The position numbers and the translations under genes were made by a program. DNA of 64,000 nucleotides, from assembly GCF_000143415.4 (NCBI RefSeq), contig NW_003314392.1:341334-405333 (forward strand), read 5' to 3'. Below the pieces are notes generated by a model. That model saw nothing but the letters and a program-made list of their open reading frames with translations. It ran no database searches and was not told the origin of the DNA. Shown here piece after piece: positions 2,501-60,889 of the stretch. Source of the DNA: Selaginella moellendorffii (Eukaryota > Plantae > Lycopodiophyta). Position 1 is the first letter of the stretch. Each line of letters starts with the position of its first letter.

Positions 2501-3203
2501 CTAGTAGAAGCCAGGCCGCAACATAGCAATGCCCATGCAGAAGTAGCACCACCGGGAAATGGCCTGAGAATGGAAAACCCTGTCCCTGACGCCAGGCCCC
2601 GGTATCATGCCACTGGGAAGCAAACCCGGTATCACTGGAAACTTTGGAACTTTGGGGACCGGCTTCTTGAGCGGAACCTCGGGAACTACTAGATACTCCG
2701 GTACCTTTGGAACTTCGGGGACAGGCTTCTTGGGAGGAATCTCCGAAAGTACTGGATACTCCCGAACCCTTGGAACTGGAACTTCTGGCACTTTGGGAAG
2801 TTCCGGAACTTTGGGTATTTCTGAAGGAACCTCCGGTACCTTGGGAATGACTGGAACCTATGAAACTATGACCGGAACCTCCGGAACCTCTGGAACCTCA
2901 GGGATGACTGGAACCTCCGGAACCTCTGGAACTTCTGGAATGACTGGAACCTCTGGAACCTTTGGAACTTCTGGAACGACTGGAACTTCCTTCGGCCTTT
3001 GGAACGATCAGGATCTCTGGAATCCTGGGGATTTCCGGATATTAGGAATCGGAATGGTGATCTCTGGTATCTCTTGCGCGCCATCAGCTCCTGGAAAGAA
3101 TCCAGCACCAAGCTGTGGCGGGATAAATCCTGGGAACCCCGCAAATCCCCCTCATCCACTGCCCAAGGAAAAGAATGCGTAGCGGGGCGAGAAGACGATC
3201 CAT
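2501..3203 (-). pseudogene. Proline-rich PEVPK/PEVPVI-repeat protein (PELPK-like cell-wall protein), disrupted
   Basis: The minus strand reads ...[72 protein letters not shown]..., with an in-frame TAG near 2860 and frameshifts near 2990-3030. A TATA-like TATATAA lies at ~3240-3246 (minus), ahead of an ATG at 3203. Confidence 0.65.
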
Positions 3204-3364
3204 GGCTGGAGAAGAAATCTCGCACCAATCCTCTGGCGCTTATATAGCAGCTCCATTCTACCTGCTTGGATCGTAGAAATGCGAGAAGAAATCACCGCGG
3301 GAGATCCTTCTCCCCTACTAGCGAATAGCCAACCCTAACCTAATCGCGCCCGGAGAGGTGAGAG

Positions 3365-3841
3365 ATGATGTTCGTGCTTGCGCCATTGCTCTTCTTCCTG
3401 GCATCGCTGCCTCGATTGTCCCTCGCCGCTGACGCCATTCTCCCCAGCGCCGAGGTGTCGCGATTCTTGGAAGAGCATGGCCTTCCCGGCGGTCTTCTCC
3501 CCAATCTGGTCACCAGCTACTCGCTGCGCGACAACAATTCCACATTCGTCGTCCATCTCCAGCACGAATGCTACCACCGCTTCGAGAATCTGGTGTGGTA
3601 TGGCACTACCATCTCTGGGAAGCTGGGCTATGGCAAGATCGAGAATCTATCGGGGATCCAGGCCAAGGAGTTCTTCCTGTGGCTGGGAGTGACGGGAATT
3701 CGCGTGGATGAATCCAACCGAGACTATATCTACTTTGAGGTGGGGATTGTGTCTAAGAGGCTGCGCGCATCGCTCTTTCGAGATCCACCATCGTGCTCAA
3801 AGTCTAGTGGCTCTCTTGTGGATCTACACGAGGCAATCTAG
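3365..3841 (+). CDS. DUF538 family protein, secreted, intronless
   Basis: Signal peptide followed by LEEHGLPGGLLP..V.SY.L...F.V.L...C....V.Y...ISG.L.YGKI.NLSGI.AKEFFLW..V..I......IYF.VG..SK......F..PP.C, the typical DUF538 pattern. Telo-box AACCCTAA at ~3331. Confidence 0.92.
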   Translation: MMFVLAPLLFFLASLPRLSLAADAILPSAEVSRFLEEHGLPGGLLPNLVTSYSLRDNNSTFVVHLQHECYHRFENLVWYGTTISGKLGYGKIENLSGIQAKEFFLWLGVTGIRVDESNRDYIYFEVGIVSKRLRASLFRDPPSCSKSSGSLVDLHEAI

Positions 3842-3951
3842 AGTTTTAGTTCCTGTCTACGTATAAGCGCTCTTTCAAGAGCCTCCATCGTGCTCAAAGT
3901 CTAGTGGTTCTCTTGTGGATCTAGATAAGGCAATCTAGAGTTTTGGTTCCT
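3771..3951 (+). repeat. Tandem duplication (period 97 bp) of the last codons and stop of the DUF538 gene
   Basis: 3771-3854 cgctctttcgagatccaccatcgtgctcaaagtctagtgg...gcaatctagagttttagttcct recurs at 3868-3951 with a few substitutions. Confidence 0.9.
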
Positions 3952-4053
3952 CGTGTTCTTCGTGTTCTATGTATCTTTTTGTTATTAAGATAATTCGAAG
4001 TGTCACACTCCTGGTGTTCTTGGTGTCACTTCGATCCATCGAGAAGAAACGAA

Positions 4054-7000
4054 CTAGAAGATCGAGGATTGCTCCAGCCTCCGTCTCTCCTTTTGCCTCG
4101 CGCGTCGAGCTTTTCTCCTGAGCGTTGCCACCGACGGCGGCCTCACCTCCTCGTCCAGTTCCACGTAGTGTTTCTCTGGCATGAGACCACCATCCCACTC
4201 TATCACCGCTTGAGCTCCTCCATTTCTATCCCAGTGTTCTTGCTCGCTGAAAGTACGCTTCTTCTTCTTCCGCTTGGATTGGAGCTCCATTCTCTCCTCT
4301 TGCTTTTCCTTCTCCAGTCCTTGCTTCTCGTGATATGGCCGCTCCTCCTCGTGAACTTGCTGCTGCCCATCCTGGATCTGTTCTAGTGCTTGACGCTTCT
4401 TCTTCTTCTTCTTCTTCTTCGGGTTCTCGGAGAGCTCAGAATTTTTTTCCTCCGCAAAAACCAGCTGGTTCTTCTCTTTCCCCTCGGCCACCAAAGTTTC
4501 CTTCTCCACTCCATCCGGTTCAAGCTCCTTCCGCTTCTTCTTCCGTTTCTTAACGTGCTCTACATTCTCTTCTTCTGGTTGAGGCTGCTCTTGCCCCTGC
4601 TCCACCTGAGCTCCTCCATCTTGTTTTAGCTCCTTACGCTTCTTCTTCCGTTTCTTGACGGGCTCAGCTTGAAGCTGGTTTTCCTTTTGGTCCTCAATTT
4701 GCTGCTGCTCTTCCTGTTCGACTTCCTTCCGCGTCTCCTTCCGGTTCTTGACGACCTCAAGACTCGGTTGAAACGGATTTATCTCTTTTTCCGACAAAGT
4801 TTCCTTCTCCGAGCACTGTTCTTTCTGCTGCTGGTCCGTCTGAGTTCCTCCATCGTACTCCAAACTCTTTTGCTCCGCTTGACCCTGGATTTGTTTCTTC
4901 TTGCCTGCAAGCTTTACTTTCACTGGCCACTCCCGCTCTTCTTGCTGCTCCTGCTGCGCCTGAGCCCCTCCATCCTGGACTAGCTCTTGTTCTGTCTCCT
5001 GGCTTTCGGACTTCTTGCGTAAATATTTCTCGGCCTGAAGCTTCTCAGCCGCGAGAGTTTGGTTATCTTGGGCCTGCTCCTGTTTTAGCTCGACGAGATT
5101 GAGGGGTGCTTTCTCGTTGTTTATCCGGCAGACAGCTCCGGTAGATCCTGCCTCCAATTGCTGCTGTTCATCTGACACTTTCTGGAAGAGAGCTTCCGTA
5201 TGTGCTTGCTCGCAGTGCTCTCTACTTCTCTGCTGCTTATCGCCCATGGATTCATTGTTTGCCTGGTTATCGCCCGCCACCTTTTCTTTCTTTATCTGGC
5301 AGACACCCTCCATAGGTGCCTTCTCGCATAGCTCGTTTTGTCTCTGCGGCACCGCCGTGGACTCCTTGTTTGTCTGACACGAAGCCCCGGTGAGTACTTT
5401 CTCGCAGTTCTCGTTTCCTCGCTGCTGGTTCATTTCTGTGGCTTCGTGCTCGCCTCTTCTCTTCTGCAGCTTATTCTCCGCCACCTTTCCTGTGGACTCC
5501 TTACACGGAGCTTCTGAGGCTGTTCTCCCGCAGCGCTCGCTTTTAGGCTGCCGCATCACCGTCGACTCATTGTTTGTCTCGCAGCGCTGGCTACCCATTT
5601 CTCTTAATTCCTTGTCCTTCTGACAAGCAGCACTGGCTGCAGGAAAAGATGGACCATTTTCGAGCCCTTCACCACCACTATCCGGCTCCATCTTCACGCG
5701 AGTTGCAGCAGCTTGAGTAGCAACCCGTTTCTCGCTGGCTGCGTTTGCAGCATTCTCAATCTTCACTTCGGCTCGACTAACTTTCGCTTTTTGGAGCTCC
5801 TTCACGCCATCCACCGAACGGACACCCGGTTGTCGATCGCCATGGTGACGCTCTTTCTCCGCATCATGTCCGTCTCTCCGATCACCACCACGGTGACATT
5901 CTTTCTCCCCGTCATGTCGATTCCTCCTCGCTTCTTGATCATATATCTGGCTTGCACGAGCCTCCTCATGTCGGTGCTTCTCGTAGTTCCTGTTGTACTT
6001 AGAATCCTCCTGTCGGTGCCTCGCTACTTCGCTACTAGGACCTGCGAGCAAGTTTTACACATTTACATCAGGATACTATTTACACTTCGCTTACCCTCAG
6101 AGGTCACGTTTGGTGGCCTTTCCAGCAAGTAAGGAACCAGGCCAGCTTGCTCTAAGCGATGGAACAGACTTCTTCTATATGCACTACCTGGATATGAATC
6201 AGCATGAAGAGACAATTTGTGCCAAGAAACGATAGCTTCTACGTACATTTTCGGATTGAATCAGACAACAAAATGCAGCGGTCCCGAGCTTTTGCCAACG
6301 CGATCAGTATCTCCGCCTCTGCAATCTACAAGTACCAAGCATTATTTAGAAAGCATGGTGTGAAGCATCCTACCCCGGCTGCATCATCTGCAAACATAAA
6401 AAAATGGGTTACAACGAAAACAAAAACCAAAGGACGAAAGCATGAGAGCAAAGCATACCGATGAGCACCAGATCGAATTTGCAGTTCCATTTCTCCAGAT
6501 GGAAACTATCACTGCAGGAGAGGGTGGTGCAAACAACGGATGCGTTGCTCAGCACGTTTTCCTCGGCAATATAATACGAACTGTAGGCCCGCTGTTCACT
6601 GATAATGATGCCCTCGAGGGTCAAGCCATGGCAATGCCTGTCGATCTTTTCCATCGGACCAACACGAACGATTGCTCCCCGGCGAGGAACGTAGGCCTGG
6701 CCATCACTGTCCAAGAGTCTGCTTGAGAGACTCAACGCTATCTGGTCCACAGCATTGTTGTATGGTGCGCACACAAGTATCTTGGCACTAGAAACACAGA
6801 GAGACCCTCGCATATAAGATCACACAAAAGAAAAACTTACTATCGGGTCGCACACAATGCCGCAGACACAATTCCTGGAAAAATATAAGTAAGCAACAGA
6901 TCAATGCAAACGTAGTCGACTTACCAACAATTGTCTCTCTCTGTACAAGGCAGAACGAAGAAGAGTCAAGTGTTACTCCAGCGCAAAAACAAAAAGAGAA

Positions 7001-7841
7001 GAAACGAGCCCCTTACCCGTAAGTTCAGCCGTCCTTTGGAAAGCACAAAGATTAATAGCCTGGACTTCTCTAGCTGTAAAACAAACCTTGAGCAAGAAGA
7101 AATCCTTCCCGGAGATGCACCGAGGCCGCCACAACGCGGCCTTGTTCGTGGTTCAACCTTAAACCAGCGAGCCAAGCACCGAAGTGTACCGCTTCCGGCC
7201 TGATGGTATTCAGAGGGCGAACAAGTTGATCTCTTAGTCTTGGCGAGATATTCTCCGCTTTAGACACCGAGAGGAAGCACCGACGGAGTGTGGCCGTGGT
7301 ATCCAAAAGGAAGACATCATACTGGAAATGCAAAGAGAAAAAGAAGTTGTAGTTCCAAAGAACCGAAAGTTACCTTTCCTTTGACGGGTTTTGTGCCATG
7401 GTGTGCTCTCAAGATGGTCCGATCGTTGATGACCCCAGTGACAATGCCGATCGCCTTGAGCTCACCAGCGCGATCTTGCACAGCAACGATTTGCGACGGC
7501 TCAAACCGCGACTGGGAACCCAGCACCTCGATGTGGCAAAAGAGGCCGCGAGTTGGATGCACGGTCACCTCACAGTCGAGAGCATTCACTTGTTTCTCAC
7601 ACCCTGTAAATGGCGCATGAGCAAGTTTTCGTTTCTCTTCCCTGAAAGCCCCAGTACCTTTTTTGAGCAGGAGATCCGATACCCGTGAGTTGCATTCTCC
7701 GAAGATCCATTTCTTGTGCTGGTGCTTGTAATCTTCAATCCCCATAAATGACACGCGGTCGAGATCGGAGCTTGAGGAGACTGGCACCTTCCCTCCCAGA
7801 AATGCGAGAACCACGGCATCAAACTCGTCATCGGGATTCAT
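4054..7841 (-). CDS. Multi-exon gene: degenerate SEN1/UPF1-like (AAA_11) helicase region plus a long E/K/Q-rich disordered C-terminus
   Basis: Exons encode ETIVGIVSAAL, KILVCAPYNNAVDQIA, AIVRVG, NASVVCTTLSCS, FDLVLI-DDAAG, AEAEILIAL..CILLSD and YRRSLFHRLEQAG, which are SF1B helicase motifs in the expected order. GT-AG introns. The final ~2 kb exon carries KKRKKKRK clusters. Exon boundaries are approximate. Confidence 0.7.
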
Positions 7842-7936
7842 AAATCCCACTGCTGGAACCCTAAAAGCCAGGGTTTTTGCAGAACATCATTATTACTTTA
7901 AACATTCTGTTTATCACTAAATAAAAAAGGCAAAAT

Positions 7937-8008
7937 GGTTCTATGGTCTAGTGGTCAGGACACTGGACTCTGAATCCAGTAGCCCGAGTTCAAGTCTCGG
8001 TAGGACCT
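7937..8008 (+). tRNA. tRNA-Gln(CTG)
   Basis: GGTTCTATGGTCTAGTGGTCAGGACACTGGACT-CTG-AATCCAGTAGCCCGAGTTCAAGTCTCGGTAGGACCT; 72 nt, cloverleaf pairs, A and B boxes intact. Confidence 0.96.
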
Positions 8009-8504
8009 CGAAGAATATAACCTTTGTCGATGTTAAGATCGACTTAATTGCATGCAAAACCTAGATTCTTAACTATTTCCTTTTTTTCACATAATTAGTT
8101 CCGAGTGAGAGAGAGAAAATATCTTACCTGAAAGGCTAGTGTCCTCTAGCCTCTAAGGCCTGTTGCGGTTAACTTTTACTTCCTCCTTGCTTGCTACTCC
8201 TAGTTACTCAATATTTCTGAAAGGAGCAAGGATAGTTAGAAGTGTTCAGAAATTTCAAGAAAAATCAAGAAACTTCATTTTGGCTCGGGACATGCATAAG
8301 GTGCCGGTTTTTCATAGGTTCATTCCCAAACATGTAACAATGCAAGCAAGGGAAGACCCCTAAACCAGCCAGCCACTTGTGGGGCACCTTACCTCACAAG
8401 CGTAACCTGACACAAGTCTTTTAATGACATGACCTCCATTTTTAAAAAATAAATTTTCCCCACAGAATTTGCATCTTGCCCGTAATTGTCTCTCTGATAC
8501 CACA

Positions 8505-11500
8505 TGTAACAACCAACCACTAAGTCCGGTCATTTCAGCCCTGGGTGACTCCCAAGGCCATCTCTCGACAGTTCACTAAGTCAGGTCCTTGTACTTGGAC
8601 CCACTCGAGCCATCTTGAGGCTAAGTCCCCATGGGTGCCATCTTTGGGACCGCCGAAGATATGCACTTCTAAACAATTGAGTTTCAACTTATCCTTGGAC
8701 GACCTCAATATTAACTATGGCACTAGCTGTTGCGAATGTGACTTCGGGTATCGAAAATTACTTGTCAGCCAGTCCTTACAGACACTCTTACCTTATTGCC
8801 ACAATGGCAGGAGGTTGGTATTGTTGAACCTTTTATTAATCCCTCTTGTTCAAATGTTAGTAAACTGGACTTTGCATTTGCACTTGGCCGGACGAGTATA
8901 AAAAAGGAATTCCTAAGTGTCTATTTAGCCAAGCATACTTGGCCCGGCTTGTTAGTTTTCTTTTGCTCTGTCTTGCACTGGCTTGACAAAAACCCTCATG
9001 TATTGAGACTAGTCCCTTAATATCGCTAGATAATAGCTTACTATGTCTGCTAAACACCCTCACTATCATGCCCTTTGTGTTAGTCTCATTTCGGTCCCAA
9101 ATGCTTGCTCATTTGGCATATTTATGGAATGTAGAGATTAACTTGAACACAATAGTGTTAGTCCCATGTCCAAATTCGCAATCTAGTACCATTCCATATT
9201 TAGTAAGTTTAGAGCTTGTCCCAGAGACTAACTCCTGATACTAAGGGAGGCTTGGGGTGAAAGCCTAAAGCGTGTGTTCCTCAAGGGGGGTGTGGGGGGT
9301 TCCAAATGTATGGTAGGGATAGTGGGTAGGTCGGGCATAGCTGACTAACCTGAGGCATAATCTAACTCCTGCTTGCGTGTCTATCCTTGTTCTGCGTCCA
9401 GCTTGGGTCTAAACCCAAGTTTCATTCCATACTAGCTGGTGGAGTACCCATATCCTTGCGTTAGGCCACCGGTATGCTGAATTAACGCCAAACTTCATTT
9501 GGCTCCATTTTGTGTGCTGATCCGGGCATTGGGATGCTGGTTGCTCCAAAACTGTTCCAAGTCGCTCCGGGCTCCTGTCCCTTTGCTCCTTGGGCTGTAT
9601 GCTCAAGAGTTACTCTGTGGTCTGATTCTGTTACTCCTTGGCTTTATGCTTGAGAGTTTGGCACCATTCCTTCGTTCAGTGGCCCAAGGCACCACTGTCC
9701 ATTGGACACGTGGCATATGACACGTGGTAGGGTTTAGGTTCCACTTCATGGTGTTATCTTATGGTAAATCACCATAGGATAAAGGGTCAAAACCACATGC
9801 GCTACATTTGGTATTAGAGGATGAGTCTCGCGAGTATTATCCAATGAGATTGGGCAACTAGTCTCATTGCATACACAAAGATGAAAATGATGATCCGAGT
9901 GGGTACACATTTGGGTGCTAAGACTTTGCAATCATTCCTTGGGTATCGATTTGGTTACCTTGTCGTACCTTATGATGTGAGCTTGCTCTTGGGCTCATAG
10001 GATTGATTGAGTTGTTTCATTTTGCATGAGTTTTTGCTTAGGCTCATGAGTGAGGCATATTAGAAAAGAGAGTCATCGGGGACGAAGGATCAAACACATA
10101 AATCGTCTTCTCTTCTTGGAGAGATGATTTACAACAAAGTGTTAATTCATTGCTCATGTTCACATTATGCAATCAAGAGTTTCTACCTTGATGCATGTTG
10201 GAAATGATGGTCTTACAAGTGGTGAGTTATAGGATGGATGGCGTTGAAATGCTATACCATTTTGTCTAGGCTTGTTATTAAAGACTTGGGTTACAATGCT
10301 CAATTTTTTTCCGGAAAACTTTGCTATTGCTCCTTGAGTATCTTAGCGTTGGATTAGTTTGAGTTTGGTCGGAAAGAGAGTGGCATGAACTTGTCCATGT
10401 TGTAAACAAAAGTTAGTGGTTGGGTGTTGTAAGTCTCTATCGGTAGAGTGTGGCATTTATGTTGCATTTTATCGAATTGAGTTGACACGTGATATTCACA
10501 TAAACCTTTGAATTAATGACATTGGCATTGTTTGTTAATGTTGCTCAATTGATGATCAAGTCATTGTGATACTTATATCATATCTATGTGATAAGAGCAA
10601 TGTGTTTACTAAGTTGCTTGGTTAAAACGATGATCAACCCCAAAGTGGTTGATGGTGAAACTAGTCTACTTGCAAGTAGTAGCATTGTAGTAGCTTTGAC
10701 TGGATTCTCGTTGGTGGTCCATTATGCTAAGCTTAAGTTGGTTCCTTAGTTTCATGTGTTTGCCCATTGAGGTGTTGGAAAAAGGGTTGTAGCATTCATT
10801 TGCTATAACTCTTCAGTTGATCCGTTAGCACTTGGAGTAGATTGTTGGATAGTGAAAGTGTGTAGTTGAGGCATTGACATCGCTAGCACTTGTGTTAGTG
10901 GAAGTGGCATTTTTATTTCGAGTGATGAGGAATTTTTCTTAGAGCTTGATTTTCTATGTCATTTTTCTTGTTAGTGTTTTAGCTTCACATTGGATATTGA
11001 AAGTAGTTGAAGAAAAGTGTCACTACAATGTGGATATCCAAAGATATGGTCTTTGTGATCAAGCCTTGGATGTTCACTTTGCATTTTGTGGATATCGGTG
11101 TTAGATGTCAAAATATGGGCATGATGTTCAATGCTTAAGCATACAGTGGGTCATGAAAATTTGTGTTGAGGTGAACCTTTGTGAAGTTGTTAGTAGGAGG
11201 AAGTTGGTTGAGTCTTAAAAGTTTGCATTTCTAGATCGAAAGTTATTGTTTCTCTAGGATGGAAAATTTTCCACAAATTTTCTTAGGCTTTTCCAATGGC
11301 TAATCTGTTGATCACTTTGCTTGAAAACCATTCCGTTTTTGAAAGTTAGTACAAACTAGTGAAAGGGTTAGAGTTGACTTTGGTTGGGTTAAACCTTAGT
11401 AGGTAGTTTGTATGATGCACCTGAAAGGGATGTTGATTTTTGGAGCTAAGGCAATTGAGTTGGATAGAGTCTGGAGTTGGTGTAGAAAAGTGGTTGTTGT

Positions 11501-26939: not shown

Positions 26940-27365
26940 CAAACTCCCTGGACTCCTGCCACTTGGTGGTGGGAGTCTCGGGAGTTCTCGGACTCCGGTA
27001 GTCCGTGCACTCCTGGGACTCCGGGAGTTCTCAGACTCCCGGGACTCCTGGAGTTCTCGGACTCTGGGAAGTCCGAGAAGTTCTCGGACTCCCGAGAGTC
27101 CCAGGAGTTCTCTCCAGGAGTGCTTGGACTCTCCTGGGAGTCCGGGGGTTCTGGGAGTTCTTGGACTCCCGGGAGTGCTCGGACTCTCCTGGGAGTCCGG
27201 GGGTTCCGGGAGTTCTCGGACTCCCTAGAGTACTCGGACTCTGGGTAGTCCGGGAGTTCTTGGATTCCGAGGAGTCCGGGAGTGCTCGGACTCTCTTGGG
27301 AGTCCGGGAGTTCTCGGACTCCGAGGTGTTTGGGAGTGCTTGGACTCCCGGGAGCCCGGGGAGTG
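26940..27365. repeat. GC-rich minisatellite of GGACTCCC / GGGAGTCC / GGAGTTCTC units
   Basis: Directly visible; it generates spurious repetitive ORFs on both strands. Confidence 0.85.
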
Positions 27366-27746: not shown

Positions 27747-28039
27747 ATGGCAGCCATGCTTGTTTTGTTCATGACCATGGTCGCAGCAGCAGCGCTATGG
27801 AAAATATCTCTTCAAGACCAGGAATCCACAAAAACTTCAAGAGTGCCAGATGACCAATTCGCCTATGTCCTGTGCCTCATCGTGATCAGCCCCCTTGAAG
27901 GTTTGGATTCCGGAAGTGGGAAGCACGCGGCGTATGTTATGTGGCACGATCGACGTGGTGAGGATGGGCATCACAAACATCCCAGACAGCATTTCCGAGT
28001 TGCGAGAGTAGAATCCAGGATCTCAAGCATCTGGTGCTG
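27747..28039 (+). pseudogene. 5' part of an mpaB-like oxygenase paralog
   Basis: MAAMLVLFMTMVAAAALWK..., PDDQFAYVLCLIVISP, AAYVMWHD and nucleotide matches (gtgaggatgggcatcacaaacatcccagacagcatttccgag; caggatctcaagcatctggtgctg) to the intact gene at 51190-52233, with deletions. Confidence 0.88.
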
Positions 28040-29559
28040 TCTGAAAAAGTTGTGGCATGAAGAAAGTAGCTGCTTTTTGGAGATATTCCTGTCAGATGTA
28101 ATAAAAAAGAGAGTGAGTTTCTTGGACAACTGCAAACCGAAGTTAGAAATACCAGATTGCACCGTAGCCATCCATGTCACATCCAAGAACAAGGTGAGGT
28201 GCTTGAGGAACGATTTCTAGCTTTAAAATGCTCCAGAAAGTCTTGGGGTTATATCTTGCAGGAGGGAGATCTGCTTCATACAAAGAATGCCTGAATAGGA
28301 CGTGATTAATGCAAGGGAATACAAACGTGAAAAACGACTACCTCCAAGACGGATCCATGCGCCATTCTTTGATACAACCTTCATCTCCAGCAGCGACTAA
28401 AGAAAGAGCTCCTGTTATCAAAAGGCATCTCATTGCGGCAGTCGCAAAATGTTCGGCCTTCGGATCACGTTCGGCATTTGGAAGTAGCAGAGATATCATG
28501 CTGGCAAACAAGTCCGAGTTGTTTTGATTTTCTTCTGCGTTGGATCCCAGCAATGACTGCTGACTGGTGCCGATTGTTACTGGTAAAAGAAAAACATGAG
28601 ATTCTCACTTCATGAGGAAGCTATTTGTACTTACGCTCTAGATTTGGTGAATTATGTTCTTCCTCTCACGTGAAGTACCTCCAGAGTATCGGCCACAATC
28701 TTAGACTCCAGCTCCTCATGTGATGTTCCTCCAGAGTATCGGGCACAATCTTCGGTTCCAGCTCTGGTTCCGAATCCGAGACATAAACATTTTCTAGACC
28801 TACTATGTCCATAAAAGTTTGTCAAAAGAAGCAAAATCGAATAAAAAACTTACAAGAATCTTCTGCACTGTGACGCTCTTGCGAGTTCCTGTCTGTTTTC
28901 TGTCGTTGAGACGACCTCACACCCTTGTCTCCTGGCCGCAGAGATAACGCTTGCTTCTTATTTCCTTCCCGAATCACTGAAGAACGAAACAAGTCTGGAG
29001 AACGAGCGCTGGGCGAACTTTGCACATTGACTTCTGTCTCATCTTTTTTCGATGAAGCAGAAACTAGTTCACGTAGGAGATACTGCACAACAGGATCCGC
29101 AAGGCCAACCATCTGCCCAGATAGAACTTTTTTTTTTTGCCGCGGAGACAACGACAAGAAAAGAACAATTGCCTCCTCGCCATTGACTCCAAGAGAACGA
29201 GTTCCTGGATGCTGAATTTTCATCATCGCTTCCCACCCGTGCTTTCAATCTCCCCGCAGCGTACCTTGAAAGTTTCCATCAAGAAACGCGCAAGAAAAAC
29301 CGAAAAGAAAAAAACTCACCGCAAACAAAGGCCCCAGCTTATCCTCTCGGATTGCCATCGCGTATGCCTCGCCTCCCTTCCTCGCAGAGCTCTGCATCCC
29401 ACAGGAAAAGGGTACATTCTTCCCAAAATCAACAAAACAGCAGCTACATTCCAGAGAAAACCGTCACCCGAGAGCTACCTCTTCTCCCACGGGCCATGGA
29501 AAAGCGATCCAAGGGCCTCGATCTCCACCGCAGCCTAGAACCCTAACCCCGACCACAAA

Positions 29560-38491: not shown

Positions 38492-38664
38492 TTCATGCCT
38501 TCCAGATGTGTGGAGGATTCAAAGGGCAGCATGGAGGTGGACTGGTGTCCCAATCCCGCTGCCAATCCAGAAGAGTACCGGGTGTATCGGCATTTGAGAA
38601 GGGAGATATACAAGCTGGTGGAGCTTGGAGCGACCGGGGGATTGCACTGCCCCTTTGCAGAATA
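38492..38664 (+). pseudogene. 3' part of the mpaB-like oxygenase paralog
   Basis: aagggcagcatggaggtggactggtgtcccaatcccgctgccaatccagaagagtaccg...gcatttgagaaggg..tacaagctg closely matches the C-terminal coding strand of 51190-52233. Confidence 0.88.
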
Positions 38665-48363: not shown

Positions 48364-50463
48364 ATGAAGAAGCTCGGATTCTTGGCGGAGACGCTCTGCT
48401 CGCAGCAATTCGTCAAGCTCGTCCTCGCCGCGGCTTTGCTCGCCTCCATCTTCCTCTATATTGGTTCTCTCGTCGGCGATGACAGCAGCAGCAGCGGCGC
48501 CGTCCAGCTCAGGCGGCCGCATTCTGGTAAATTTCGCTCTTGCCCGCCATAACTTCTCACTGATTTGATCGATCGCGATGGCAGATGATTTGTCACCCAA
48601 CACGGTTCGTCTGTCACTTCGATCCCAGCCACTCCAGATCCCTCCCGATGGAGTCAGCCTCTGCCCAAGCAACTTTACCGAGTACATCCCATGCCACGAT
48701 CCAAACTACATTGCTTCCATCTCCAGCAAGCTCAATCTCTCGAGAAGGGAGCACTTGGAGCGACAATGCCCCCCACCACATCAGCGTCCTTTCTGCCTTG
48801 TTCCTCCACCAAAGTCCTACAAGCTTCCCATCCGGTGGCCCCAGAGCCGAGACTATGTGTGGAGGAGCAACGTAAACCACACCCGGCTAGCCGAAGTGAA
48901 AGGTGGCCAGAACTGGGTCCACGTTAAAGGCTCCACGATGTGGTTTCCGGGAGGAGGGACGCATTTCAAGCATGGAGCTCCCGAGTACATCCAGAGGTAA
49001 CACTTTTCTTTTGATCCATTGATCCATCAGCTTCGTGTAGACAGGCTAGGAAACATGACCACGGATTGGAAGGGAGATTTACAGACTGCTGGAGTGGCTC
49101 GAGTTTTGGACGTTGGCTGCGGAGTTGCAAGCTTTGCAGCTTATCTCTTCAACCTCGACATCCAGACCATGTCGTTTGCGCCGCTTGACTCTCACGAGAA
49201 TCAGATCCAGTTCGCTCTGGAACGAGGAATACCGGCTCTTGTTGCGGCGCTTGGAACCAAGCGCTTGCCGTATCCTTCCAGATCCTTCGATGCTGTTCAC
49301 TGTTCCCGCTGTCGCGTCGATTGGCACGAAGATGGTAAGCATTAGTTGGAATCTCGTGCATGATATAAAAATGTTCCTTTCCGTGAATCTGCAGGAGGTA
49401 TTTTGCTCAGGGAAATGGACCGGATTTTAAGACCTGGTGGCTTCTTCATCTATTCTGCACCTCCAGCTTATCGCAAAGACAAGGATTTCCCTGAAGTTTG
49501 GAACATCCTGACCAACATTACAGAATCTCTTTGCTGGAAGCTGATCGCACGGCACGTCCAGACTGCGGTTTGGAGGAAGACCGCCGACAGGTCCTGTCAG
49601 CTCGCCAAGTCCAAGCTGTGCGCTAACCAAAGCAAGGAGTTTCTAGACAACTCGTGGAACAAGCCACTGGACGACTGCATTGCCTTGTCTGAGGACAATG
49701 ATGCCAATTTCGTCCAACTTCCTTCATGGCCGGAACGGCTTACAACTTACTCGAACCAGCTCGGTAACTTTGTTATATACTCCAGTATGTGGTAACGGGA
49801 TTTCTTTTGCACAGGGATCAGCTCATCTTCTTTCAAAGAAGACACATCTCTCTGGGAAGGCAAAGTTGGAAACTATTGGAAGCTGCTTAATGTATCCGAA
49901 AATTCCATTCGGAACGTTATGGATATGAATGCTGGATACGGAGGCTTTGCTGCTGCCTTGTTACTACAGAACAATCCCGTGTGGATCATGAACGTGGTTC
50001 CATCGGAATCTAGCAACACTCTCAACGTTGTCTATGGTCGAGGCCTCGTAGGCACCTTGCATAGCTGGTACGTAGGCTTGCTCATACTCACTTGGCTTTC
50101 TTCTCATTTCTTGCATCCACAGGTGCGAAAGCTTTTCGAGCTACCCGAGGAGCTACGACTTGTTGCACGCATATCGCGTGATGTCCCTCTATCCAGGGAG
50201 AAAAGGGTGCCAGATCGAAGATATAATGCTGGAAATGGATCGGCTGCTGAGACCGAATGTAAGTTTTCTCATTTGACTTCTAGGAGTTGATTCTAGCAAC
50301 TACGACGCAGGCTCTTGCGATCTTTCAAGATTCCTCACCTGCGGTGCAGCGCATACTGGAGTTGGCACCAAGGTTCCTGTGGGTTGCCAGAGTCCATCGC
50401 ATTCTTGAAAAAGACGAGCAGCTTCTTATATGCTCTAAGAAGTTCTGGATCGTCGACGTCTAA
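48364..50463 (+). CDS. Golgi type II membrane SAM methyltransferase (Methyltransf_29 / PMT family)
   Basis: N-terminal [86 protein letters not shown] and YPRSYDLLH. Confidence 0.94.
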
Positions 50464-51030
50464 GGTAGAGTATGGTGATGATTAGTCTTCGAAGTTTTCC
50501 ACGAGAATGCACTGTGGCGACAGTAATAACAGGGTTGTTAGTATTCTCAGGCAGACACAACGATTTGTTTAGGAGCTATTGTAGTCCAGCAAAGGTCCTA
50601 AGCGAGAGGCATGGCTTTCATATCTTGGTTAGTTTGTGCCAACATGATTCTCCAGGTGTGGTAATAGCTCCTACACCGATCAAAGCCAGCTTGCGCGAGG
50701 TAAAAGTTCGTTTTCGTTATTTCTTTTTACTCTGCTTTGTGCTACTTATGAGCTACTGCTGGAGGATATCCACGCGAAGATCATGTCAAGAGGCTGAGAC
50801 TTTGGAACTCACTCGGAGTTGGAGTTTTTGTCATCCCCAAGAGCTGTGCAGACATTTCCGGAGCCACCAATGGACATTCCATCGTGGATTCGTGAAATTT
50901 CATTAGGAGGACATAGAAAATCATTTAAACACATATTAAGTTGACGAAATCTCTATCAAGTATTAAAATGTCTATTCAGCAATTAAACAATGGCTTGATA
51001 CAAATTCTTCCTTTGTATTCGTTGTCTGAT

Positions 51031-51102
51031 GTCGTTGTAGTATAGTGGTGAGTATTTCCGCCTGTCACGCGGACGACCCGGGTTCGATCCCCGGCAACGG
51101 CG
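51031..51102 (+). tRNA. tRNA-Asp(GTC)
   Basis: GTCGTTGTAGTATAGTGGTGAGTATTTCCGCCT-GTC-ACGCGGACGACCCGGGTTCGATCCCCGGCAACGGCG; all stems pair. Confidence 0.96.
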
Positions 51103-51189
51103 AGATTACGAGCAAACATGCTTATAATTATAAACTTTATTTGATCAATTGGATTAATAAGTAATAACAAAACTTTACTTAAGGTATTT

Positions 51190-52233
51190 CTATGCATGCA
51201 TTTGCTGAAAGGGACAACGTAATCCTCCATCGTAGTATGGTCCAATCTTGCCGGATTTCAGCACTCCCAGCTCCGCCAGCTTGTATCCCTTCTCAAATGC
51301 TGGTGGCCGATACACATTCACGTTGAGCTGCCGGTACTCTTCCGGATTGGCAGCGGGATTGGGACACCAGTCCACCTCAATGCTGCCCTTCGCATCCTCC
51401 ACACGTCTGGGAGGCATAAATGCGGACACGCAGCTCCCGGCCAGCAGCTTGAACGCACCCAAGATGATCCACTCCACGATCACGGGGGGCTTTTCCAATC
51501 CAACAGCGCTCCTGATTGTGGGATCGATGAGCGCGCAGATCCCAGTCTCTACCAGCGGCTGCACGGGCTGAGGAAACGCGTCCAGCACCAGATGCTTGAG
51601 ATCCTGGACGATGCTCTTGTTCTTGTCCGTGAAGATGGCGTTCTTGGCCTCGTACTCGCGAATGTACTCTCGCATCTCGGAAATGCTGTCTGGGATGTTT
51701 GTGATGCCCATCCTCACGCCCACGTCGTGCCACACAACATACGCGGCCTCCTTCTCGTTGTCGGTCCACTTGCGGAATCCAAACTTCTCCGAGAAATCAA
51801 TGGGACTGATCACGTTGAGGCAGAGGACGTAGGCGAATTGGTCGTTTGGGATCTTGAATTTGTTGTGGATTCCATTCAATCTCCTCACCGCGTACGAGCC
51901 GCGATCGCTGTCGACGTGGTGGTGGATCATCTCGCTCACCAGAATGTTGGTCTCGGCGGCGCGCTTCTCGGGATCCTTGAGGCCGTACTTGGTCTTGAAG
52001 AGCAGATTTGTGATCCCGGGGATGCCCAGCGTGCGGATGGTGCCAAACTCGAGCGCCTTTTGTGAGAGGAAGGGGAATTCCACCGAGTACATATACCACA
52101 AGATCTTGTGGGCATCTCTCACGGGGTGGAGTGACGCTAGAAATCTCGCTCTCTCTTTTCTCTTGCCAATGCACACCATCTTCCATGCTGCAGCCATCAC
52201 GAGCAACACGATCATCAACAAGATTGCAGCCAT
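51190..52233 (-). CDS. ER-bound oxygenase MpaB / rubber-oxygenase-like (DUF2236) protein, intronless
   Basis: N-terminal TM anchor; EFPFLSQKALEFGTIRTLGIPGITNLL, KRAAETNILVSEM, AVRRLNGIHNKFKIPNDQFAYVL, FGFRKWTDNEKEAAY..W..VG.RMGI.NIP and EYE. This matches the MpaB-type pattern, including the conserved N..H. TATA (minus) at ~52329-52334. Confidence 0.85.
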   Translation of the reverse strand: MAAILLMIVLLVMAAAWKMVCIGKRKERARFLASLHPVRDAHKILWYMYSVEFPFLSQKALEFGTIRTLGIPGITNLLFKTKYGLKDPEKRAAETNILVSEMIHHHVDSDRGSYAVRRLNGIHNKFKIPNDQFAYVLCLNVISPIDFSEKFGFRKWTDNEKEAAYVVWHDVGVRMGITNIPDSISEMREYIREYEAKNAIFTDKNKSIVQDLKHLVLDAFPQPVQPLVETGICALIDPTIRSAVGLEKPPVIVEWIILGAFKLLAGSCVSAFMPPRRVEDAKGSIEVDWCPNPAANPEEYRQLNVNVYRPPAFEKGYKLAELGVLKSGKIGPYYDGGLRCPFQQMHA

Positions 52234-55150: not shown

Positions 55151-56210
55151 AGTTCTCTTTATTTTCTCTTTGGAGCAACTGTACAAGAACTTTGTTTGAT
55201 CTTTGCAAAGTTTGGGTTTTGTTCTTCTGGAGATCCTAAATACTAGACGGGCAAAGCACCGGAATTTTGTCTCTTGGACGGTTCTAATGTTGGTGAACGA
55301 CAGAGTGATGGTCTTGCAGCTTCTCTCGAATGCAGTGCTTCGAAGGAGAGTCACAGATACGGAAGCTCTCAGGCTTCCGTAGCAGTGATCCAGCCTGCAG
55401 CGGACATGGCAGGGATAAAAAACTAAGGTTCCAATGGCCGGTAGAGACGAGTTTTTCCTTAATCAAGTCACAAATTTTAAAGCTTAATTTGGAGCTTCTC
55501 TTGTTTATAAAAGTCTGTCTTTCTTGCTATGCAAAGTAGAAAATAAAAAAGAGAAGAAAAAAGTGTTATTTTGCTAGAGGGCTGCAATATTTGTTGCATT
55601 ATTTGTGTTAAGCAGCTTTTCCACGATAAAATTATATGTTTTTCTGAATTACAGTTCGATTGGGGTCCATGAGCTAAGTTCCATGAAACAACTCTCAAGC
55701 AAATATAACTATGGTAACGAGCAGTACTAAAAGACCACTTTAGATGACCAGCGCCATTGGAATATTACATGCAAATTTTAGAAGCTCTTGATTCTTCTCC
55801 ACCTTTGCCTTGATGATAAGTTTCTTCTGCAAATTCAGAATTGATTTCTCCTCTTGCTTGATCATCTTACACTCTCCTAAAAAGTCCCACAATCATCTGC
55901 AAGCTAAACAAATTTGCGGTTGTGGCAAATGGTGCTGCTGTAATAGTCTTTTACGTGGCTGCCCCTTTGCCACGCTCACTCGCTTCTTCCGTGGTCCCAG
56001 CTCTGCACCCTAAATGTTTAACTACTAACTCTAAATTAGTAATATCATGATTTTAATTAGTAGATGTTATTAACGGATATGTTAGTTCCAGTGAATGAAC
56101 GGCTATAATTTATAAGTATATAACCTAGGCTTGGTTTAGGTTTTTCTTCAGTGTTTTATATTTGTGCTCCTTATATTTTCTTTCTTATTTTATTCATTCT
56201 CTTTAGTATT

Positions 56211-57171
56211 ATGGCTAGATTGGAATATGTAGATTATGCTCAAGATAGTATTCTTTCTTTTTCTGATCTTATTAAGAGAACTAATATTAAAGTGAATTCT
56301 TTTACTTTTTGTATTAGGGTGAGAATGTGAGAGATGCCATTGACTAATGAGATATCGATCTGATAATCAAGGTTGTAAAAATGGTTTGAAGTGGAATTGT
56401 AAAAATTGCAATACCACAAGATCTCTTAAAACTAGTACATGGTTTGTAAATAGTAATCTCACATTTGCTCAAATGCTTAGAGTGATATATTGTTGGTGCA
56501 TTAAAATGCCACAAGGTCAAGCTCGTATTAAAAGTAAGCATACGACAAAAAATTGGTACAATTTTTGTCATGATATTTGTGTTATCACATTACAACAAAA
56601 AAATTGGTAGTCCAAAAAGAATTGTGGAAATTGATAAAAGTAAGTTTGGTAGTGAAAATATAATTATGGTAGAAGAGTAAAAGGTCAATAGATTTTTGAA
56701 GGAATTGAGCATGATTCAGATCAAATGTTTATAGTTTTGGTGGCGAATCGTACTGCACAAACTTTAATTGATATATTATATACATATGTTAAACCAAGAA
56801 AATTCTATTTCTATTATTAAACTTAACTACTGCTAATAATTAATCTTTTAGGAACAGTTATATATAGTGATTTTTGGGCTAGTTATGATTCAGAGTGGTT
56901 GAATTAGTTGAACTTCACTTATTATACAATTAACCACTCCTATAATTTTATTGATTCCGTGATTGGAGTTCATATAAATCATATTGAATCAATATGGAAT
57001 GCAGTGAAAAGATCCATCCTTTGCTATGGTATAACAAAAGGATTATATAGCTCTTACTTTCAAGAACATATTTGGCAAAAACTATATATTGAAAGAAAGG
57101 AAGTTGCATTTAATATTCTATGTAGTTATATTATGCTATACAATCAAGATAATTTTTTTATAGCAGAATAA
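56211..57171 (+). mobile_element. Merlin / IS1016-IS1595-like (ISXO2-type) DDE transposase remnant
   Basis: WNC..C...RSL...TWF..SNL, VEIDKSKFG..KYNYGR.VKGQ*IF.GIE, VANRTAQTL....YVKP-GTVIYSDFWASY, INHS.NF.D...GVH.NHIESIWNAVKR and YFQE.IW; contains stops and frameshifts. Confidence 0.82.
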
Positions 57172-58025
57172 ATAGTATATTTGATTTTGTACTTTTAAAT
57201 ACTTAAAAAAATAATTGAAAATAATTTACTAGGACAATATTTAATTTATAGTAATGAGGTGGCATGCCTATGTAAGCAATGAGGTAGTGTGAAAATCCAA
57301 ATAAGCAAATGGGTCCCACCCTAAATAAAGGGGGGTGCTGTATTGTGCATTCTACCCATTTGTCTTTAGCTTTACTGTAAGACATTTAAGATTTGGTTTG
57401 GGTGGTGGTTCTCCAACTTATGGAAGTTATGGAACAATGTCATCCATCACCTGATGGAAGTATGCATGGAGTATCAGATTGCGGTGTTGCAAATAAGAAG
57501 AAGGCATAGGCTACTTCACCATATAAACAGCAACAATTCCATTTGATATGGCTTGCATATGTTTTTTATAATGGTAGTTATGTTGGTTGCTCACTAATAT
57601 TATTATAATTTTTCTGTTCATAAAGGATCACACTATTGCTTGAAAGTTGATAGGGGTTGAGGGGAGGTTATATTCGCAAGCAATCTACAAATGTTCCAAA
57701 CACATGATCTAAAAATAGTAAAGATTGAGCTGGATTAATTTGTTTGGTTGATAATGCATAACATCTTATCTAATTAACTAGCTACACAAAGAACATCTAA
57801 GAAGATCTTTTTTCTTTTATCAGAAGAAAATTTGAAGAAATAATAAATTTATATGATGCTCTTAGATGCTTGGGCCACACAATGCTAGTCAATGTAGTTA
57901 ATCATATGGTAATAGAATCAATTTTGTATATAAGTATTATAAAGGAAACACATGATAAAAGAATATAAGCCCTTGGTGAATCTTGAAATATTAAATTTAA
58001 TTTATTATCAGTTTTTTATTAACTT

Positions 58026-60227
58026 TATGAGTGCTTGGGATATAGGAATAGGTATATTAATTAGGGTTGAGACCCCTGCTTATATACAAGAATAGATGGA
58101 CCAAATTCAATCCCAAATAGACAGTCCATATGCTATAGTACTATAATTAGTGCATTACTTAGCTAGAGTAAAACATGTATATACATATATGTATTTACAA
58201 GCCTTACACCATCCTCCCCTCCAGAAGATGAAAAAATAATGATAATAAATTAGGTGGAATATCTAGAATTTCTGTTGGGCAATTATAAACTACCACAAGA
58301 ATCTTAAACTCCCATAAAAACACCAATAAAGTTGTTAATAACCATGACTGAAATAAAACCCAAAGCCATGGCATAAGCATGTCGACTATGGCACCTCGAT
58401 AAATCAATTACAACTTTGTATGCAACTCCCAAATGCTCAAAGCAAACACATAACCATAACTTTGAATAAAGGAGGTCAAATTCACTCCATTTGTCCTCTA
58501 TATTTTCCTTATCCCCTCTTGGAAGGAAAAAAAGTTTTGAAGCACTAGCTCCATTCAAATTTATTATACTCATCCTCACTCTACCATTTATATCTAGCCT
58601 CACTTCACTATTGCATCTGTTTGGCCTCATTACATCGGAGCCAAATGTTCTGTTTGGACTCGTTATACTCATCCTCACTCCACAATCCATATCATTCGTA
58701 CTCACTCCACTATTGTATTCACTTGTCCTCACTCCATTGTTGGGGTTGGACTCCCATTTATCCCCTTTACCCCCTCCTCCAAAGAAAAAAAAAGTTTGAA
58801 GTATCAAAGCAAAAAGGAGAAAACGAGAAAAATTAAGGAAAAATAATTGTGGAAGAAGAAAAAGCGGATAAAGAAGTATCAGAAAAGGAATTTACAGCAA
58901 TTGACAAGGCAGAAATAGGGAAATCAAAAGAATATGTGCTTAAGGATTTGACAATAGGGGATTTTCTATTATAAAATACTTCGGCCACCACAATATAAGC
59001 AAAAGATTCACACCACTCAACCTTCTCAACACACAACTCAACACTTGAGACAAGAAAATCAATAATAACATCTACACTCTCAAAGAAATATATAAATTCC
59101 TCAGCAGCAAACAGTAAAGCAAAAGTTCTCAGTGGCATTTAGAAGTGAGGATATACATTCAACCTGAAACTCTGGCCAAAGTGACTCAACCCTTGGAACA
59201 GGGGAATACTCAACACTAAAATTGATCAAAGACTCTGCTAATAAAACAAAAACAAGATTCTCAACTTTATAGACATGCTCAACATCTAAATTAGTATGAA
59301 GAAGACAAGAAACACTCAACTCAACACTGGATTGAAAATGAAAATCATGAGAGTCACAAATGATTGATGTGCCAGAAGAAGAAAACATTGTAGATGAGGA
59401 AGAAATACTAGAAACATGAAAAAATGGCTTAGGCCAAAAAATAAGAAAAGGTTGGGAAAATGCAGAAGGGAAAGAGAAAAGATCAGATGGCAAATTGAAA
59501 TATTGACATCTACCCCACAAAATCTCTACTTCATCTCCAAAGTTATCTCCATAATAATCAAGTTCATCATCACACTCTGGAATCCACTTTAGCTTGTACA
59601 CACCATCTTCCCATAAATTTGATCCTTGAACATTCTCCAAAAATTGGATTGCATTATCCATAGCTCGTCAATCAATATCACGATCATATTCCATATCAAT
59701 AGGAGATGGCAAAACATTATAAACAAGACAAGCCGTGTAATCACGTCCTACAAAAGCTGAAGACAGCAACACACCAAGGATGGGTGCAACACTAATATGA
59801 TTACACGCAACAACACCAAAAGTTTGATCCAACAGAGCAGCATTAGTAGCCTCAAGTGACATACTCCTTGATTGATGACGGCGTAGCATAGTAGAAAAAG
59901 AGAATGCAATAAAGATTAGAAGAAAAAGTAAATCTATTTAGAAGAGAATGAAGAAATAAAAATAAAAAAGCACGATCCCGAACATTAAAGCAAAGAACTA
60001 CTAAAAAGCTTTGCCCTTCAGAGACAAGCTACAATGTTCACCAATGTAAGTGCTCGGGGTATAAAAATAGGTATATTAATTAGGGTTTAGACCTTTACTT
60101 ATATATAAAAATGAATAAACCAAATTCAGTCCCAAATGGACGGTCCATATGCTATAGTACTATAATTAATGTATTACCTAGCTAAGGTAATATATGTATA
60201 TACATACATGTATTTACAAACCTTACA
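58026..60227 (-). mobile_element. Non-autonomous LTR retroelement with ~183-bp LTRs
   Basis: Direct repeats 58026-58208 and 60045-60227 (t[g/a]t[a/g]agtgct...ccttaca). PBS-like tggtgaacattgtag (minus) next to 60045. PPT ggaggggaggatgg (minus) next to 58208. ACTT flanks both ends. Confidence 0.78.
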
Positions 60228-60889
60228 ACTTGTATTATTTATGTGGTTTAAGTAAAATAACTTAATTTCTATTGTTTGTGTAATGTATAAAAAATAAAGT
60301 TAATCAAAATCACAATTGCTTTAGTTCTATGCTCTTGTAAATAATATTGTTGCTACTATGGTCACTTTCTTGCAAAGAAAAGCCACTTGTATTATGCATT
60401 GTTATTATGTTGAGAGTTTGAAATTAATTTATTGCAAAATGTCAAAGAATGAAAATTATAATAAATTTATTTATATTTTAATAAATAACATAAAATAACA
60501 TAACTATTTATGTTATCCATAAATAGTTATGGATAACTCTATAATAGTTAAAGAGTTGACTCAAGTTTCAATTGTAGTTTAATACAAACATAATAAAATT
60601 TAAAATATTAAGGTTATAGCAAACTTAATTGAATAAATAGTTGTCCATAACTATAAATAAACTACCATTATTATAGAAATTTATGACAATAATTGTTATC
60701 CTTTCATAATGGATTTGAGATCCAAATCACTCCAGGAACAAAACCAATGTAGTATAATAACAATGCTGCAACTTTTAATCTATAATGATCAAAATATAGC
60801 TACATATTAATAAAGTTCACAACATAGTACAACATATATAAGTTTTCTAGAAAATACTTATATATATATACACACACACATACATATGT

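What the first reader, a model, noticed from the sequence alone, without database searches (positions are those of the whole stretch)
51190..52233. Intronless fungal/bacterial-type MpaB-like heme oxygenase in a plant, next to a tRNA: HGT candidate
Seen: a 347-aa single-exon gene with GC-rich codons, among mostly intron-rich neighbours. It has a TM anchor and a TATA box and ends 88 bp from tRNA-Asp; a paralog remnant lies elsewhere in the window. Established: the MpaB/Lcp (DUF2236) family cleaves isoprenoid C=C bonds (the mycophenolate farnesyl side chain, rubber) and is known mainly from fungi and bacteria. Inference: a horizontally acquired, expanded family that could give this plant an undescribed prenyl-cleaving branch of specialised metabolism.
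Basis: partly seen in the sequence, partly recalled or inferred. Interest (0 to 1): 0.75.

Follow-up and report, generated by a model that had tools for sequence, protein, structure and literature searches.

The report
Spikemoss MpaB-type haem oxygenase gene
This is a real, intact Selaginella gene for a membrane-anchored MpaB/anethole-oxygenase-type (probably haem) enzyme that cuts carbon-carbon double bonds, but it belongs to an old gene family shared with ferns and is not a recent import from a fungus or bacterium.

Summary
Window 51190-52233 (-) is an intact 347-aa single-exon ORF in Selaginella moellendorffii (scaffold GL377696.1). It hits Pfam PF09995 (MpaB/Lcp catalytic domain). It has an N-terminal hydrophobic helix and an upstream TATAAATA, a tRNA-Asp lies 86 bp past its stop, and two decayed copies lie elsewhere in the window.

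The model is confident (pLDDT 94) and matches trans-anethole oxygenase and latex-clearing protein. The family's R/T/H triad is present (R91, T95, H123), and H123 is invariant in 104 relatives. Paralogues are under purifying selection (dN/dS about 0.1).

The recent-HGT reading is not supported.
- The nearest relatives outside Selaginella are fern genes (Adiantum, Ceratopteris). Together they form a 100/99-supported clade, and a species-tree-like arrangement is not rejected (AU p 0.65).
- Three other genes of that clade, including a Selaginella paralogue, share one phase-2 intron at the same codon. This gene's lack of introns is therefore a secondary loss.
- The tRNA travels only with the youngest duplicates.
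- More distant relatives include chytrids, amoebae, a diatom and a cryptophyte, not only fungi and bacteria.

An ancient transfer before the lycophyte-fern split cannot be excluded. The substrate is unknown. The scan had already noted this family on other DNA of this genome.

The parts
51190..52233 (-). Intact single-exon CDS, 347 aa, MpaB/TAO/Lcp-family putative haem-dependent alkene-cleaving oxygenase
   Evidence: ORF. Pfam PF09995 E 1e-10. AF2 model pLDDT 94.4 matching 8s1j and 5o1m. dN/dS 0.11-0.15 against paralogues.
52168..52230 (-). Codons for residues 2-22, an N-terminal hydrophobic membrane-anchor helix
   Evidence: Mean Kyte-Doolittle 2.6 over 19 residues. Modelled helix 2-34. MpaB' is ER-bound and predicted membrane-associated (10.1101/524025).
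51949..51963 (-). Codons R91-A-A-E94-T95. These correspond to the distal-side R..T pair of the DUF2236 triad. An acidic residue sits where Lcp has its distal Lys.
   Evidence: R91 and T95 are conserved in at least 90% of 104 relatives. KRxDDT aligns with TAO 8s1j. Lcp R164/T168 are active-site residues (PMC5522427; PMC6311187).
51865..51867 (-). Codon of His123 (in RRLNGIH), the probable proximal haem ligand
   Evidence: It is the only invariant column in 104 sequences. It aligns with the NKIH motif of TAO. Its spacing from R91 (32) and R118 (5) equals that of the essential R125/R152/H157 of PgMpaB (PMC6900556).
52327..52334 (-). TATAAATA, a candidate TATA box 101 nt upstream of the ATG
   Evidence: Read. 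It lies inside the 1.8-kb unit duplicated on GL377734.1. Not tested functionally.
51030..51103 (+). tRNA-Asp(GTC), a neighbour duplicated together with the gene; not an integration mark
   Evidence: ARAGORN. It is present beside both L002 copies and absent beside the L001 and L008 paralogues.
27747..28040 (+). Internally deleted, stop-containing mini-copy (pseudogene) of the same gene
   Evidence: tblastn and blastn. Sequence read.
38492..38662 (+). C-terminal remnant of a paralogue (aligns with residues 272-344)
   Evidence: tblastn E 4e-16, 58% identity. blastn 92% over 90 nt.

Best explanation
The gene encodes a membrane-anchored enzyme of the MpaB / trans-anethole-oxygenase / Lcp family, which has a globin-like, all-helical fold. 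Inferred mechanism: the N-terminal helix holds the enzyme on an endomembrane, probably the ER as for fungal MpaB'. His123 ligates a b-type haem on the proximal side. O2 binds on the distal side next to Arg91 and Thr95. The enzyme then cleaves a C=C bond of a lipophilic substrate (a prenyl chain or an aryl-propene) into two carbonyl products. In evolutionary terms it is a young, locally duplicated, intron-less member of a family that is amplified in Selaginella moellendorffii. That family forms one clade with fern genes, so it has been in vascular-plant genomes since at least the lycophyte-fern split. The intron was lost secondarily in this sub-lineage. It is not a recent transfer from a fungus or bacterium. 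Shown here: ORF, family, fold, conserved residues, purifying selection, the plant clade, the shared intron, the plant genomic context. Inferred: haem binding, ER location, reaction type. Unknown: the substrate.
For: Family and fold: Pfam PF09995 E 1e-10. Profile against PDB hits TAO 8s1j at E 6.7e-19 with KRxDDT and NxIH aligned. AF2 model pLDDT 94.4, pTM 0.92. Foldseek: 8s1j E 9e-8, TM 0.62/0.71; Lcp 5o1m and 5o1l probability 1.0. The ESM Atlas best shape match is a bacterial 'oxygenase MpaB family' cluster, TM 0.78/0.84.
Residues: H123 is invariant, and R91, T95 and N120 are at least 90% conserved in 104 sequences. They correspond to the R/T/H triad of DUF2236 and match the spacing of the essential residues of PgMpaB.
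Selection: dN/dS 0.11-0.15 at dS 0.23 against the L001 paralogues.
Plant context: the window is 100% identical to GL377696.1, and the gene is flanked by FtsJ, Methyltransf_29, a TPR/GT41 protein, Arf, LTP and peroxidase genes.
Family size: at least six further full-length ORFs and one truncated one on three other scaffolds. The 90% cluster of P0001 holds 22 sequences.
Phylogeny: an exhaustive HMMER search gave 1328 hits. After Selaginella the best are Adiantum and Ceratopteris. The careful IQ-TREE run gives the plant clade 100/99 support. AU test of fern monophyly: p 0.65, and the constrained tree is 12.5 lnL units better.
Intron: a phase-2 intron in the codon before [FY]G[FY]R is present in P0002/L008, L005 and L007. 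Chytrid introns lie elsewhere.
Against: No biochemical datum exists for any plant member. Two RNA-seq runs, sampled at about 12%, gave no read on this copy while the neighbouring gene was covered, so this copy may be silent or expressed only under some conditions. Transcription of paralogues rests only on Logan contigs whose RNA status is a guess. Only about 30 of the 150 best hits could be given an organism, and hits ranked below 150 were not seen, so the range of the family in green plants is incompletely known. The free tree nests Selaginella among the ferns (98/84), which could also reflect old paralogy or plant-to-plant transfer. The fern genes' DNA could not be fetched, so whether they share the intron is unknown. 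L005 and L007 have no organism label.
Confidence: 0.72

Rival explanations
1. Ancient horizontal transfer. An MpaB/TAO-type gene entered the common ancestor of vascular plants, or a somewhat earlier land-plant ancestor, from a microbial eukaryote or a bacterium. It then gained an intron, was inherited vertically by lycophytes and ferns, and was lost in seed plants. This would parallel the microbial-type terpene synthases of non-seed plants (from my own knowledge, not checked here).
For: Among the labelled hits, only lycophyte and fern sequences come from plants. The next relatives are microbial eukaryotes and bacteria at 26-33% identity. The plant clade sits on a long stem inside a microbial polytomy. 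The plant intron is not shared with the two chytrid genes examined. On the taxa seen, one gain plus one loss is more parsimonious than many losses.
Against: No donor clade is resolved. The only supported sister is one unlabelled contig, P0009 (94/93). Hits beyond rank 150 were not inspected and most were unlabelled, so bryophyte or algal members cannot be excluded.
Confidence: 0.35
2. Recent, lineage-specific transfer from a fungus or bacterium into Selaginella, integrated next to a tRNA gene.
For: The gene has one exon, GC3 of 0.74 and a tRNA-Asp 86 nt downstream. The family is best known from fungi and bacteria.
Against: Fern relatives form a 100/99 clade with it. The best non-plant identity is only about 33%. 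Paralogues and two other genes of the plant clade carry a shared intron, so the lack of introns is secondary. The tRNA accompanies only the copies that are 99.6% or more identical in the coding sequence. Paralogues differ by dS 0.23 and by up to 30% at the protein level, so diversification within Selaginella is old.
Confidence: 0.03
3. The copy in this window is a silent or decaying duplicate with no function of its own, and only other paralogues are active.
For: No read from two RNA-seq runs while the neighbouring gene is expressed. Two decayed copies lie in the same window.
Against: The ORF is intact, and an identical protein is encoded on a second scaffold. Every synonymous and non-synonymous comparison indicates constraint (dN/dS 0.09-0.15 in the comparisons with a non-synonymous change). 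The TATA-bearing promoter region is retained in the duplicates. Only two samples of unknown tissue were examined.
Confidence: 0.2

Closest known systems
Trans-anethole oxygenase (TAO; PDB 8s1j, Stenotrophomonas maltophilia; first described from Pseudomonas putida JYR-1, PMC3774712)
   Same: Best structural and sequence match among solved structures (Foldseek E 9e-8, TM 0.62/0.71; profile E 6.7e-19). The KRxDDT and NxIH motifs are shared. Soluble core of similar size.
   Different: About 19% identity. TAO is a soluble bacterial catabolic enzyme without the N-terminal membrane helix or the roughly 70-residue C-terminal extension. Its substrate, an aryl-propene, has not been shown for the plant protein.
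Fungal MpaB / MpaB' (mycophenolic acid pathway; 10.1101/524025, PMC6900556)
   Same: Same Pfam family. A eukaryotic, membrane-bound form. Arg/Arg/His spacing identical to the essential R125/R152/H157 of PgMpaB. NCBI names a Selaginella paralogue 'mycophenolic acid synthesis protein B-like'.
   Different: Not an orthologue: the plant clade does not group with the Ascomycota clade (Taphrina) in the tree. No prenyltransferase, PKS or other pathway gene lies beside any Selaginella copy. I had no MpaB sequence for a direct alignment.
Latex clearing protein Lcp (Streptomyces sp. K30; PDB 5o1l/5o1m; PMC5522427)
   Same: Same Pfam domain and globin-like core (Foldseek probability 1.0). The R/T/H triad is conserved.
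   Different: TM only about 0.5 and 14-16% identity. Lcp is a secreted bacterial enzyme with Lys167 as distal haem ligand, whereas this protein has Glu94 (Asp in most relatives) at that position and a membrane anchor in place of a secretion signal.
Fern homologues (Ceratopteris richardii KP509_24G042500/600/700; Adiantum nelumboides L7F22_010630 and L7F22_045800)
   Same: Nearest relatives outside Selaginella (35-38% identity, full length). Same N-terminal hydrophobic helix and C-terminal extension in the alignment. Tandem copies here too. One clade at 100/99.
   Different: Uncharacterised hypothetical proteins. The gene spans exceed the CDS length, which suggests introns, but their positions could not be read.

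Membership tests
Pfam PF09995 MPAB_Lcp_cat (DUF2236) | Score above the curated gathering threshold | tested here: met
   42.5 bits against a cut-off of 23, E 1e-10, residues 86-249.
Pfam PF09995 MPAB_Lcp_cat (DUF2236) | Conserved Arg/Thr/His triad (Lcp K30 R164/T168/H198) | tested here: met
   R91/T95/H123. The Arg-to-Thr spacing is 4, as in Lcp. H123 is invariant, and R91 and T95 are at least 90% conserved in 104 sequences. The motifs align with TAO. The triad is defined in PMC5522427 and PMC6311187.
Pfam PF09995 MPAB_Lcp_cat (DUF2236) | Globin-like all-helical fold of Lcp/TAO | tested here: met
   AF2 model pLDDT 94.4. Foldseek matches 8s1j and 5o1m/5o1l at probability 1.0.
Pfam PF09995 MPAB_Lcp_cat (DUF2236) | Binds b-type haem and cleaves C=C bonds with O2 | not testable with these tools
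   Needs expressed protein, UV/vis spectra and product analysis.
Fungal MpaB/MpaB' orthologue | Membrane (ER) association | tested here: inconclusive
   An N-terminal hydrophobic helix is present. Localisation was not tested.
Fungal MpaB/MpaB' orthologue | Groups with fungal MpaB in a tree and sits in a meroterpenoid gene cluster | tested here: not met
   The plant clade is separate from the Taphrina-containing clade. The neighbours are unrelated plant genes.
Lcp rubber oxygenase | Secreted protein with a distal Lys haem ligand | tested here: not met
   Glu94 stands where Lcp has Lys167 (sequence). The N-terminus is a membrane anchor with no twin-arginine motif. Lys167 is itself only 59% conserved among Lcps.
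Horizontally acquired gene (recent) | Absent from related plant lineages and nested in a donor clade | tested here: not met
   Fern relatives exist. No donor clade is resolved. Fern monophyly is not rejected.
Horizontally acquired gene (recent) | Lack of introns as the original state of the gene | tested here: not met
   A shared phase-2 intron occurs in P0002/L008, L005 and L007.
Horizontally acquired gene (ancient, before the lycophyte-fern split) | No orthologue in bryophytes, streptophyte algae or chlorophytes | tested here: inconclusive
   None was seen among the labelled top hits. Most hits are unlabelled and ranks below 150 were not shown.

The most novel reading that the evidence does not exclude
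Seed-free vascular plants (lycophytes and ferns) keep a haem-dependent, ER-anchored alkene-cleaving oxygenase lineage that was acquired once from a microbe before they diverged and was lost in seed plants. In Selaginella it was amplified to serve a prenyl- or propenyl-cleaving step of specialised metabolism, which seed plants carry out, if at all, with non-haem carotenoid-cleavage dioxygenases.
Probability: 0.25. Interest if true: 0.65.

Novelty: new member of a known kind. Interest (0 to 1): 0.4.

Why it matters
No paper in the searched library discusses plant members of the MpaB/Lcp/TAO family. The known enzymes of this family cut isoprenoid or aryl-alkene double bonds. A plant clade confined, as far as seen, to lycophytes and ferns, and amplified in Selaginella, is a reasonable candidate for an unstudied step of specialised metabolism. 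It would also be one more example of a gene family that seed plants lack. It does not provide a clean case of recent inter-kingdom gene transfer. It also shows that a single exon, high GC3 and a tRNA neighbour are poor HGT indicators in this genome.

Tried and rejected
- The word-index protein searches found few relatives beyond Selaginella and Adiantum. The 31-sequence profile was swamped by 8000 candidates.
- NCBIfam gave no hit.
- DNA of the Ceratopteris and Adiantum genes could not be fetched, so the fern intron positions stay unknown.
- The organisms behind contigs SRR4210093, ERZ1034413, SRR28082851 and DRR778189 could not be identified, and no paper names these accessions.
- A Pfam scan of other ORFs on L005 failed on coordinates and was not repeated.
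- The GC3 comparison with neighbouring genes used stop-free segments rather than true exons, so it is only indicative.
- The ARAGORN 'tRNA-Arg' at 27218-27306 was rejected as a false positive inside a tandem repeat.
- I did not search joined-exon models of L005 or L007. The tree used P0183, the product of its second exon, as called.
- No solved-structure or paper source for MpaB gave a sequence, so the match to the PgMpaB residues rests on spacing only.

Full report
**Observation**

The ORF at 51190-52233 (-) is real: 347 aa, ATG start, one exon. It matches Pfam PF09995, the catalytic domain of ER-bound oxygenase MpaB/B' and rubber oxygenase, at E 1e-10 and 42.5 bits against a cut-off of 23. 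NCBIfam has no model for it.

- A tRNA-Asp(GTC) lies at 51030-51103 (+), 86 nt past the stop codon.
- TATAAATA lies 101 nt upstream of the ATG.
- Residues 2-22 are strongly hydrophobic.
- The CDS has GC 0.55 and GC3 0.74, in a window of about 0.45 GC.
- Two decayed copies are present in the window: an internally deleted, stop-containing mini-copy at about 27747-28040 (+) and a C-terminal piece at 38492-38662 (+).

**Source and context**

The window is 100% identical to Selaginella moellendorffii GCA_000143415.2, scaffold GL377696.1. The flanking genes are ordinary plant genes: FtsJ, Methyltransf_29, a TPR/GT41 protein, Arf, LTP and a peroxidase. RNA reads show GT..AG joints in the neighbouring methyltransferase. 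The gene is therefore part of the plant genome and not a contaminant.

The same protein is encoded on GL377734.1, where two copies each carry the tRNA-Asp. Three copies lie in tandem on GL377605.1, one of them truncated. A 70%-identical paralogue (P0002) lies on GL377594.1. The 90% cluster of P0001 holds 22 sequences.

**What the protein is**

An alignment of 104 relatives has a single invariant column, His123. R91, T95, N120 and a few others are at least 90% conserved. The AlphaFold model built on that alignment is confident (pLDDT 94.4, pTM 0.92) and all-helical.

- Foldseek against the PDB finds trans-anethole oxygenase 8s1j (E 9e-8, TM 0.62/0.71), then latex clearing protein 5o1m and 5o1l (probability 1.0, TM about 0.5). 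Nothing else is credible.
- The profile hits 8s1j at E 6.7e-19, with the KRxDDT and NxIH motifs aligned.
- In Lcp K30, His198 is the proximal haem ligand and Arg164 and Thr168 are active-site residues. These three define DUF2236 (PMC5522427; PMC6311187).
- In PgMpaB, Arg125, Arg152 and His157 are essential (PMC6900556). The spacings 32 and 5 are exactly those of R91, R118 and H123 here.
- Where Lcp has its distal ligand Lys167, this protein has Glu94, and most relatives have Asp.
- MpaB' is ER-bound and predicted to be membrane-associated (10.1101/524025), which fits the N-terminal helix here.

I therefore infer a membrane-anchored, haem b-dependent dioxygenase that cleaves a C=C bond of a lipophilic substrate. 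The substrate is unknown. No prenyltransferase, terpene synthase or PKS gene lies beside any copy.

**Is it functional?**

Against the GL377605.1 paralogues, dS is 0.23 and dN/dS is 0.11-0.15, so the sequence is under constraint.

Two RNA-seq runs of the same species label, sampled at about 12%, gave no read on the gene, while the adjacent methyltransferase was covered at depth 5-27. Logan contigs of two other runs cover only the CDS and not the intergenic DNA, and they carry paralogue-like variants. Their RNA status is a guess. Expression of this particular copy is therefore unproven.

**Origin**

An exhaustive HMMER search of 1.84 billion representatives gave 1328 hits at E 0.001 or better. 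After Selaginella (775 bits) the scores drop to about 250 bits. Those next hits are ferns: two Adiantum nelumboides genes and three tandem genes on a Ceratopteris richardii chromosome.

Further relatives that could be labelled are:
- chytrids (Batrachochytrium, Polyrhizophydium, Spizellomyces);
- Basidiobolus and Taphrina;
- Phalansterium (Amoebozoa) and Pharyngomonas (Heterolobosea);
- the diatom Chaetoceros and the cryptophyte Hemiselmis;
- bacteria (Caldilineaceae, Myxococcota, Streptoalloteichus).

A careful IQ-TREE analysis (LG+C20+F+G4 by PMSF, 72 rows) unites Selaginella, the ferns and two unlabelled contigs at 100/99. One unlabelled contig is sister to them (94/93), and everything deeper is an unresolved polytomy. 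The free tree nests Selaginella among the ferns (98/84). However, the tree with the ferns held together has a higher likelihood by 12.5 units and is not rejected (AU p 0.65). The gene tree is thus compatible with the species tree for lycophytes and ferns.

**The intron**

I followed that lead with my own data.

- The S. moellendorffii paralogue P0002 has a 98-nt GT..AG intron in phase 2, inside the codon just before FGFR.
- A Selaginella-like genomic contig (L007, whose product is 65% identical) has an intron at the same codon and phase.
- So does L005, a distant member of the plant clade (31-35% identical).
- The chytrid genes have introns elsewhere (phase 0, at other codons), and the Basidiobolus gene has none.

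The ancestor of the plant clade therefore had this intron, and the window gene's sub-lineage lost it. The single exon says nothing about a microbial source.

**The tRNA**

The tRNA-Asp accompanies only the copies that share a unit of about 1.8 kb with the window. That unit is 96-98% identical, and the coding sequences are 99.6% or more identical. The older paralogues on GL377605.1 and GL377594.1 have no tRNA nearby. It is a passenger of recent segmental duplication.

**Verdict**

The recent-HGT interpretation is not supported.

What remains open is whether the family entered plants by an ancient transfer before the lycophyte-fern split, or descends from still older ancestors with many losses. 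I saw no bryophyte, algal or seed-plant member. However, only about 30 of the 150 listed hits could be labelled, and lower-ranked hits were not shown.

No paper in the searched library treats plant members of this family. The scan had already noted this family on other pieces of the same genome.

Noticed in passing
window 27150-27340: A tandem repeat of units like GGGAGTCCGGGAGTTCTCGGACTCC. ARAGORN calls an 89-nt 'tRNA-Arg(CCG)' inside it (27218-27306), which is almost certainly a false positive.
   Followed up: partly
window 27990-28062: A contig of run X2 reproduces the 56-nt deletion (with three other letters in its place) and the downstream flank of the internally deleted mini-copy, not of the intact gene. 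If that run is RNA, which is only a guess, the pseudogene is transcribed.
   Followed up: partly
window 50462-50549: RNA reads show two alternative GT..AG joints (skipping 59 or 86 nt) at or just past the annotated end of the Methyltransf_29 gene. Its transcript runs on to about 50,900, close to the tRNA-Asp.
   Followed up: no
window 56000-62000: An AT-rich stretch (GC 0.29-0.35), in contrast to about 0.45-0.52 elsewhere in the window. Not examined.
   Followed up: no
L001 (GL377605.1) 2738-8840: A strictosidine-synthase-like gene and an alpha/beta-hydrolase gene lie next to the three-copy MpaB-like tandem array. There is no evidence that they form a pathway.
   Followed up: no
Not examined.
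   Followed up: no
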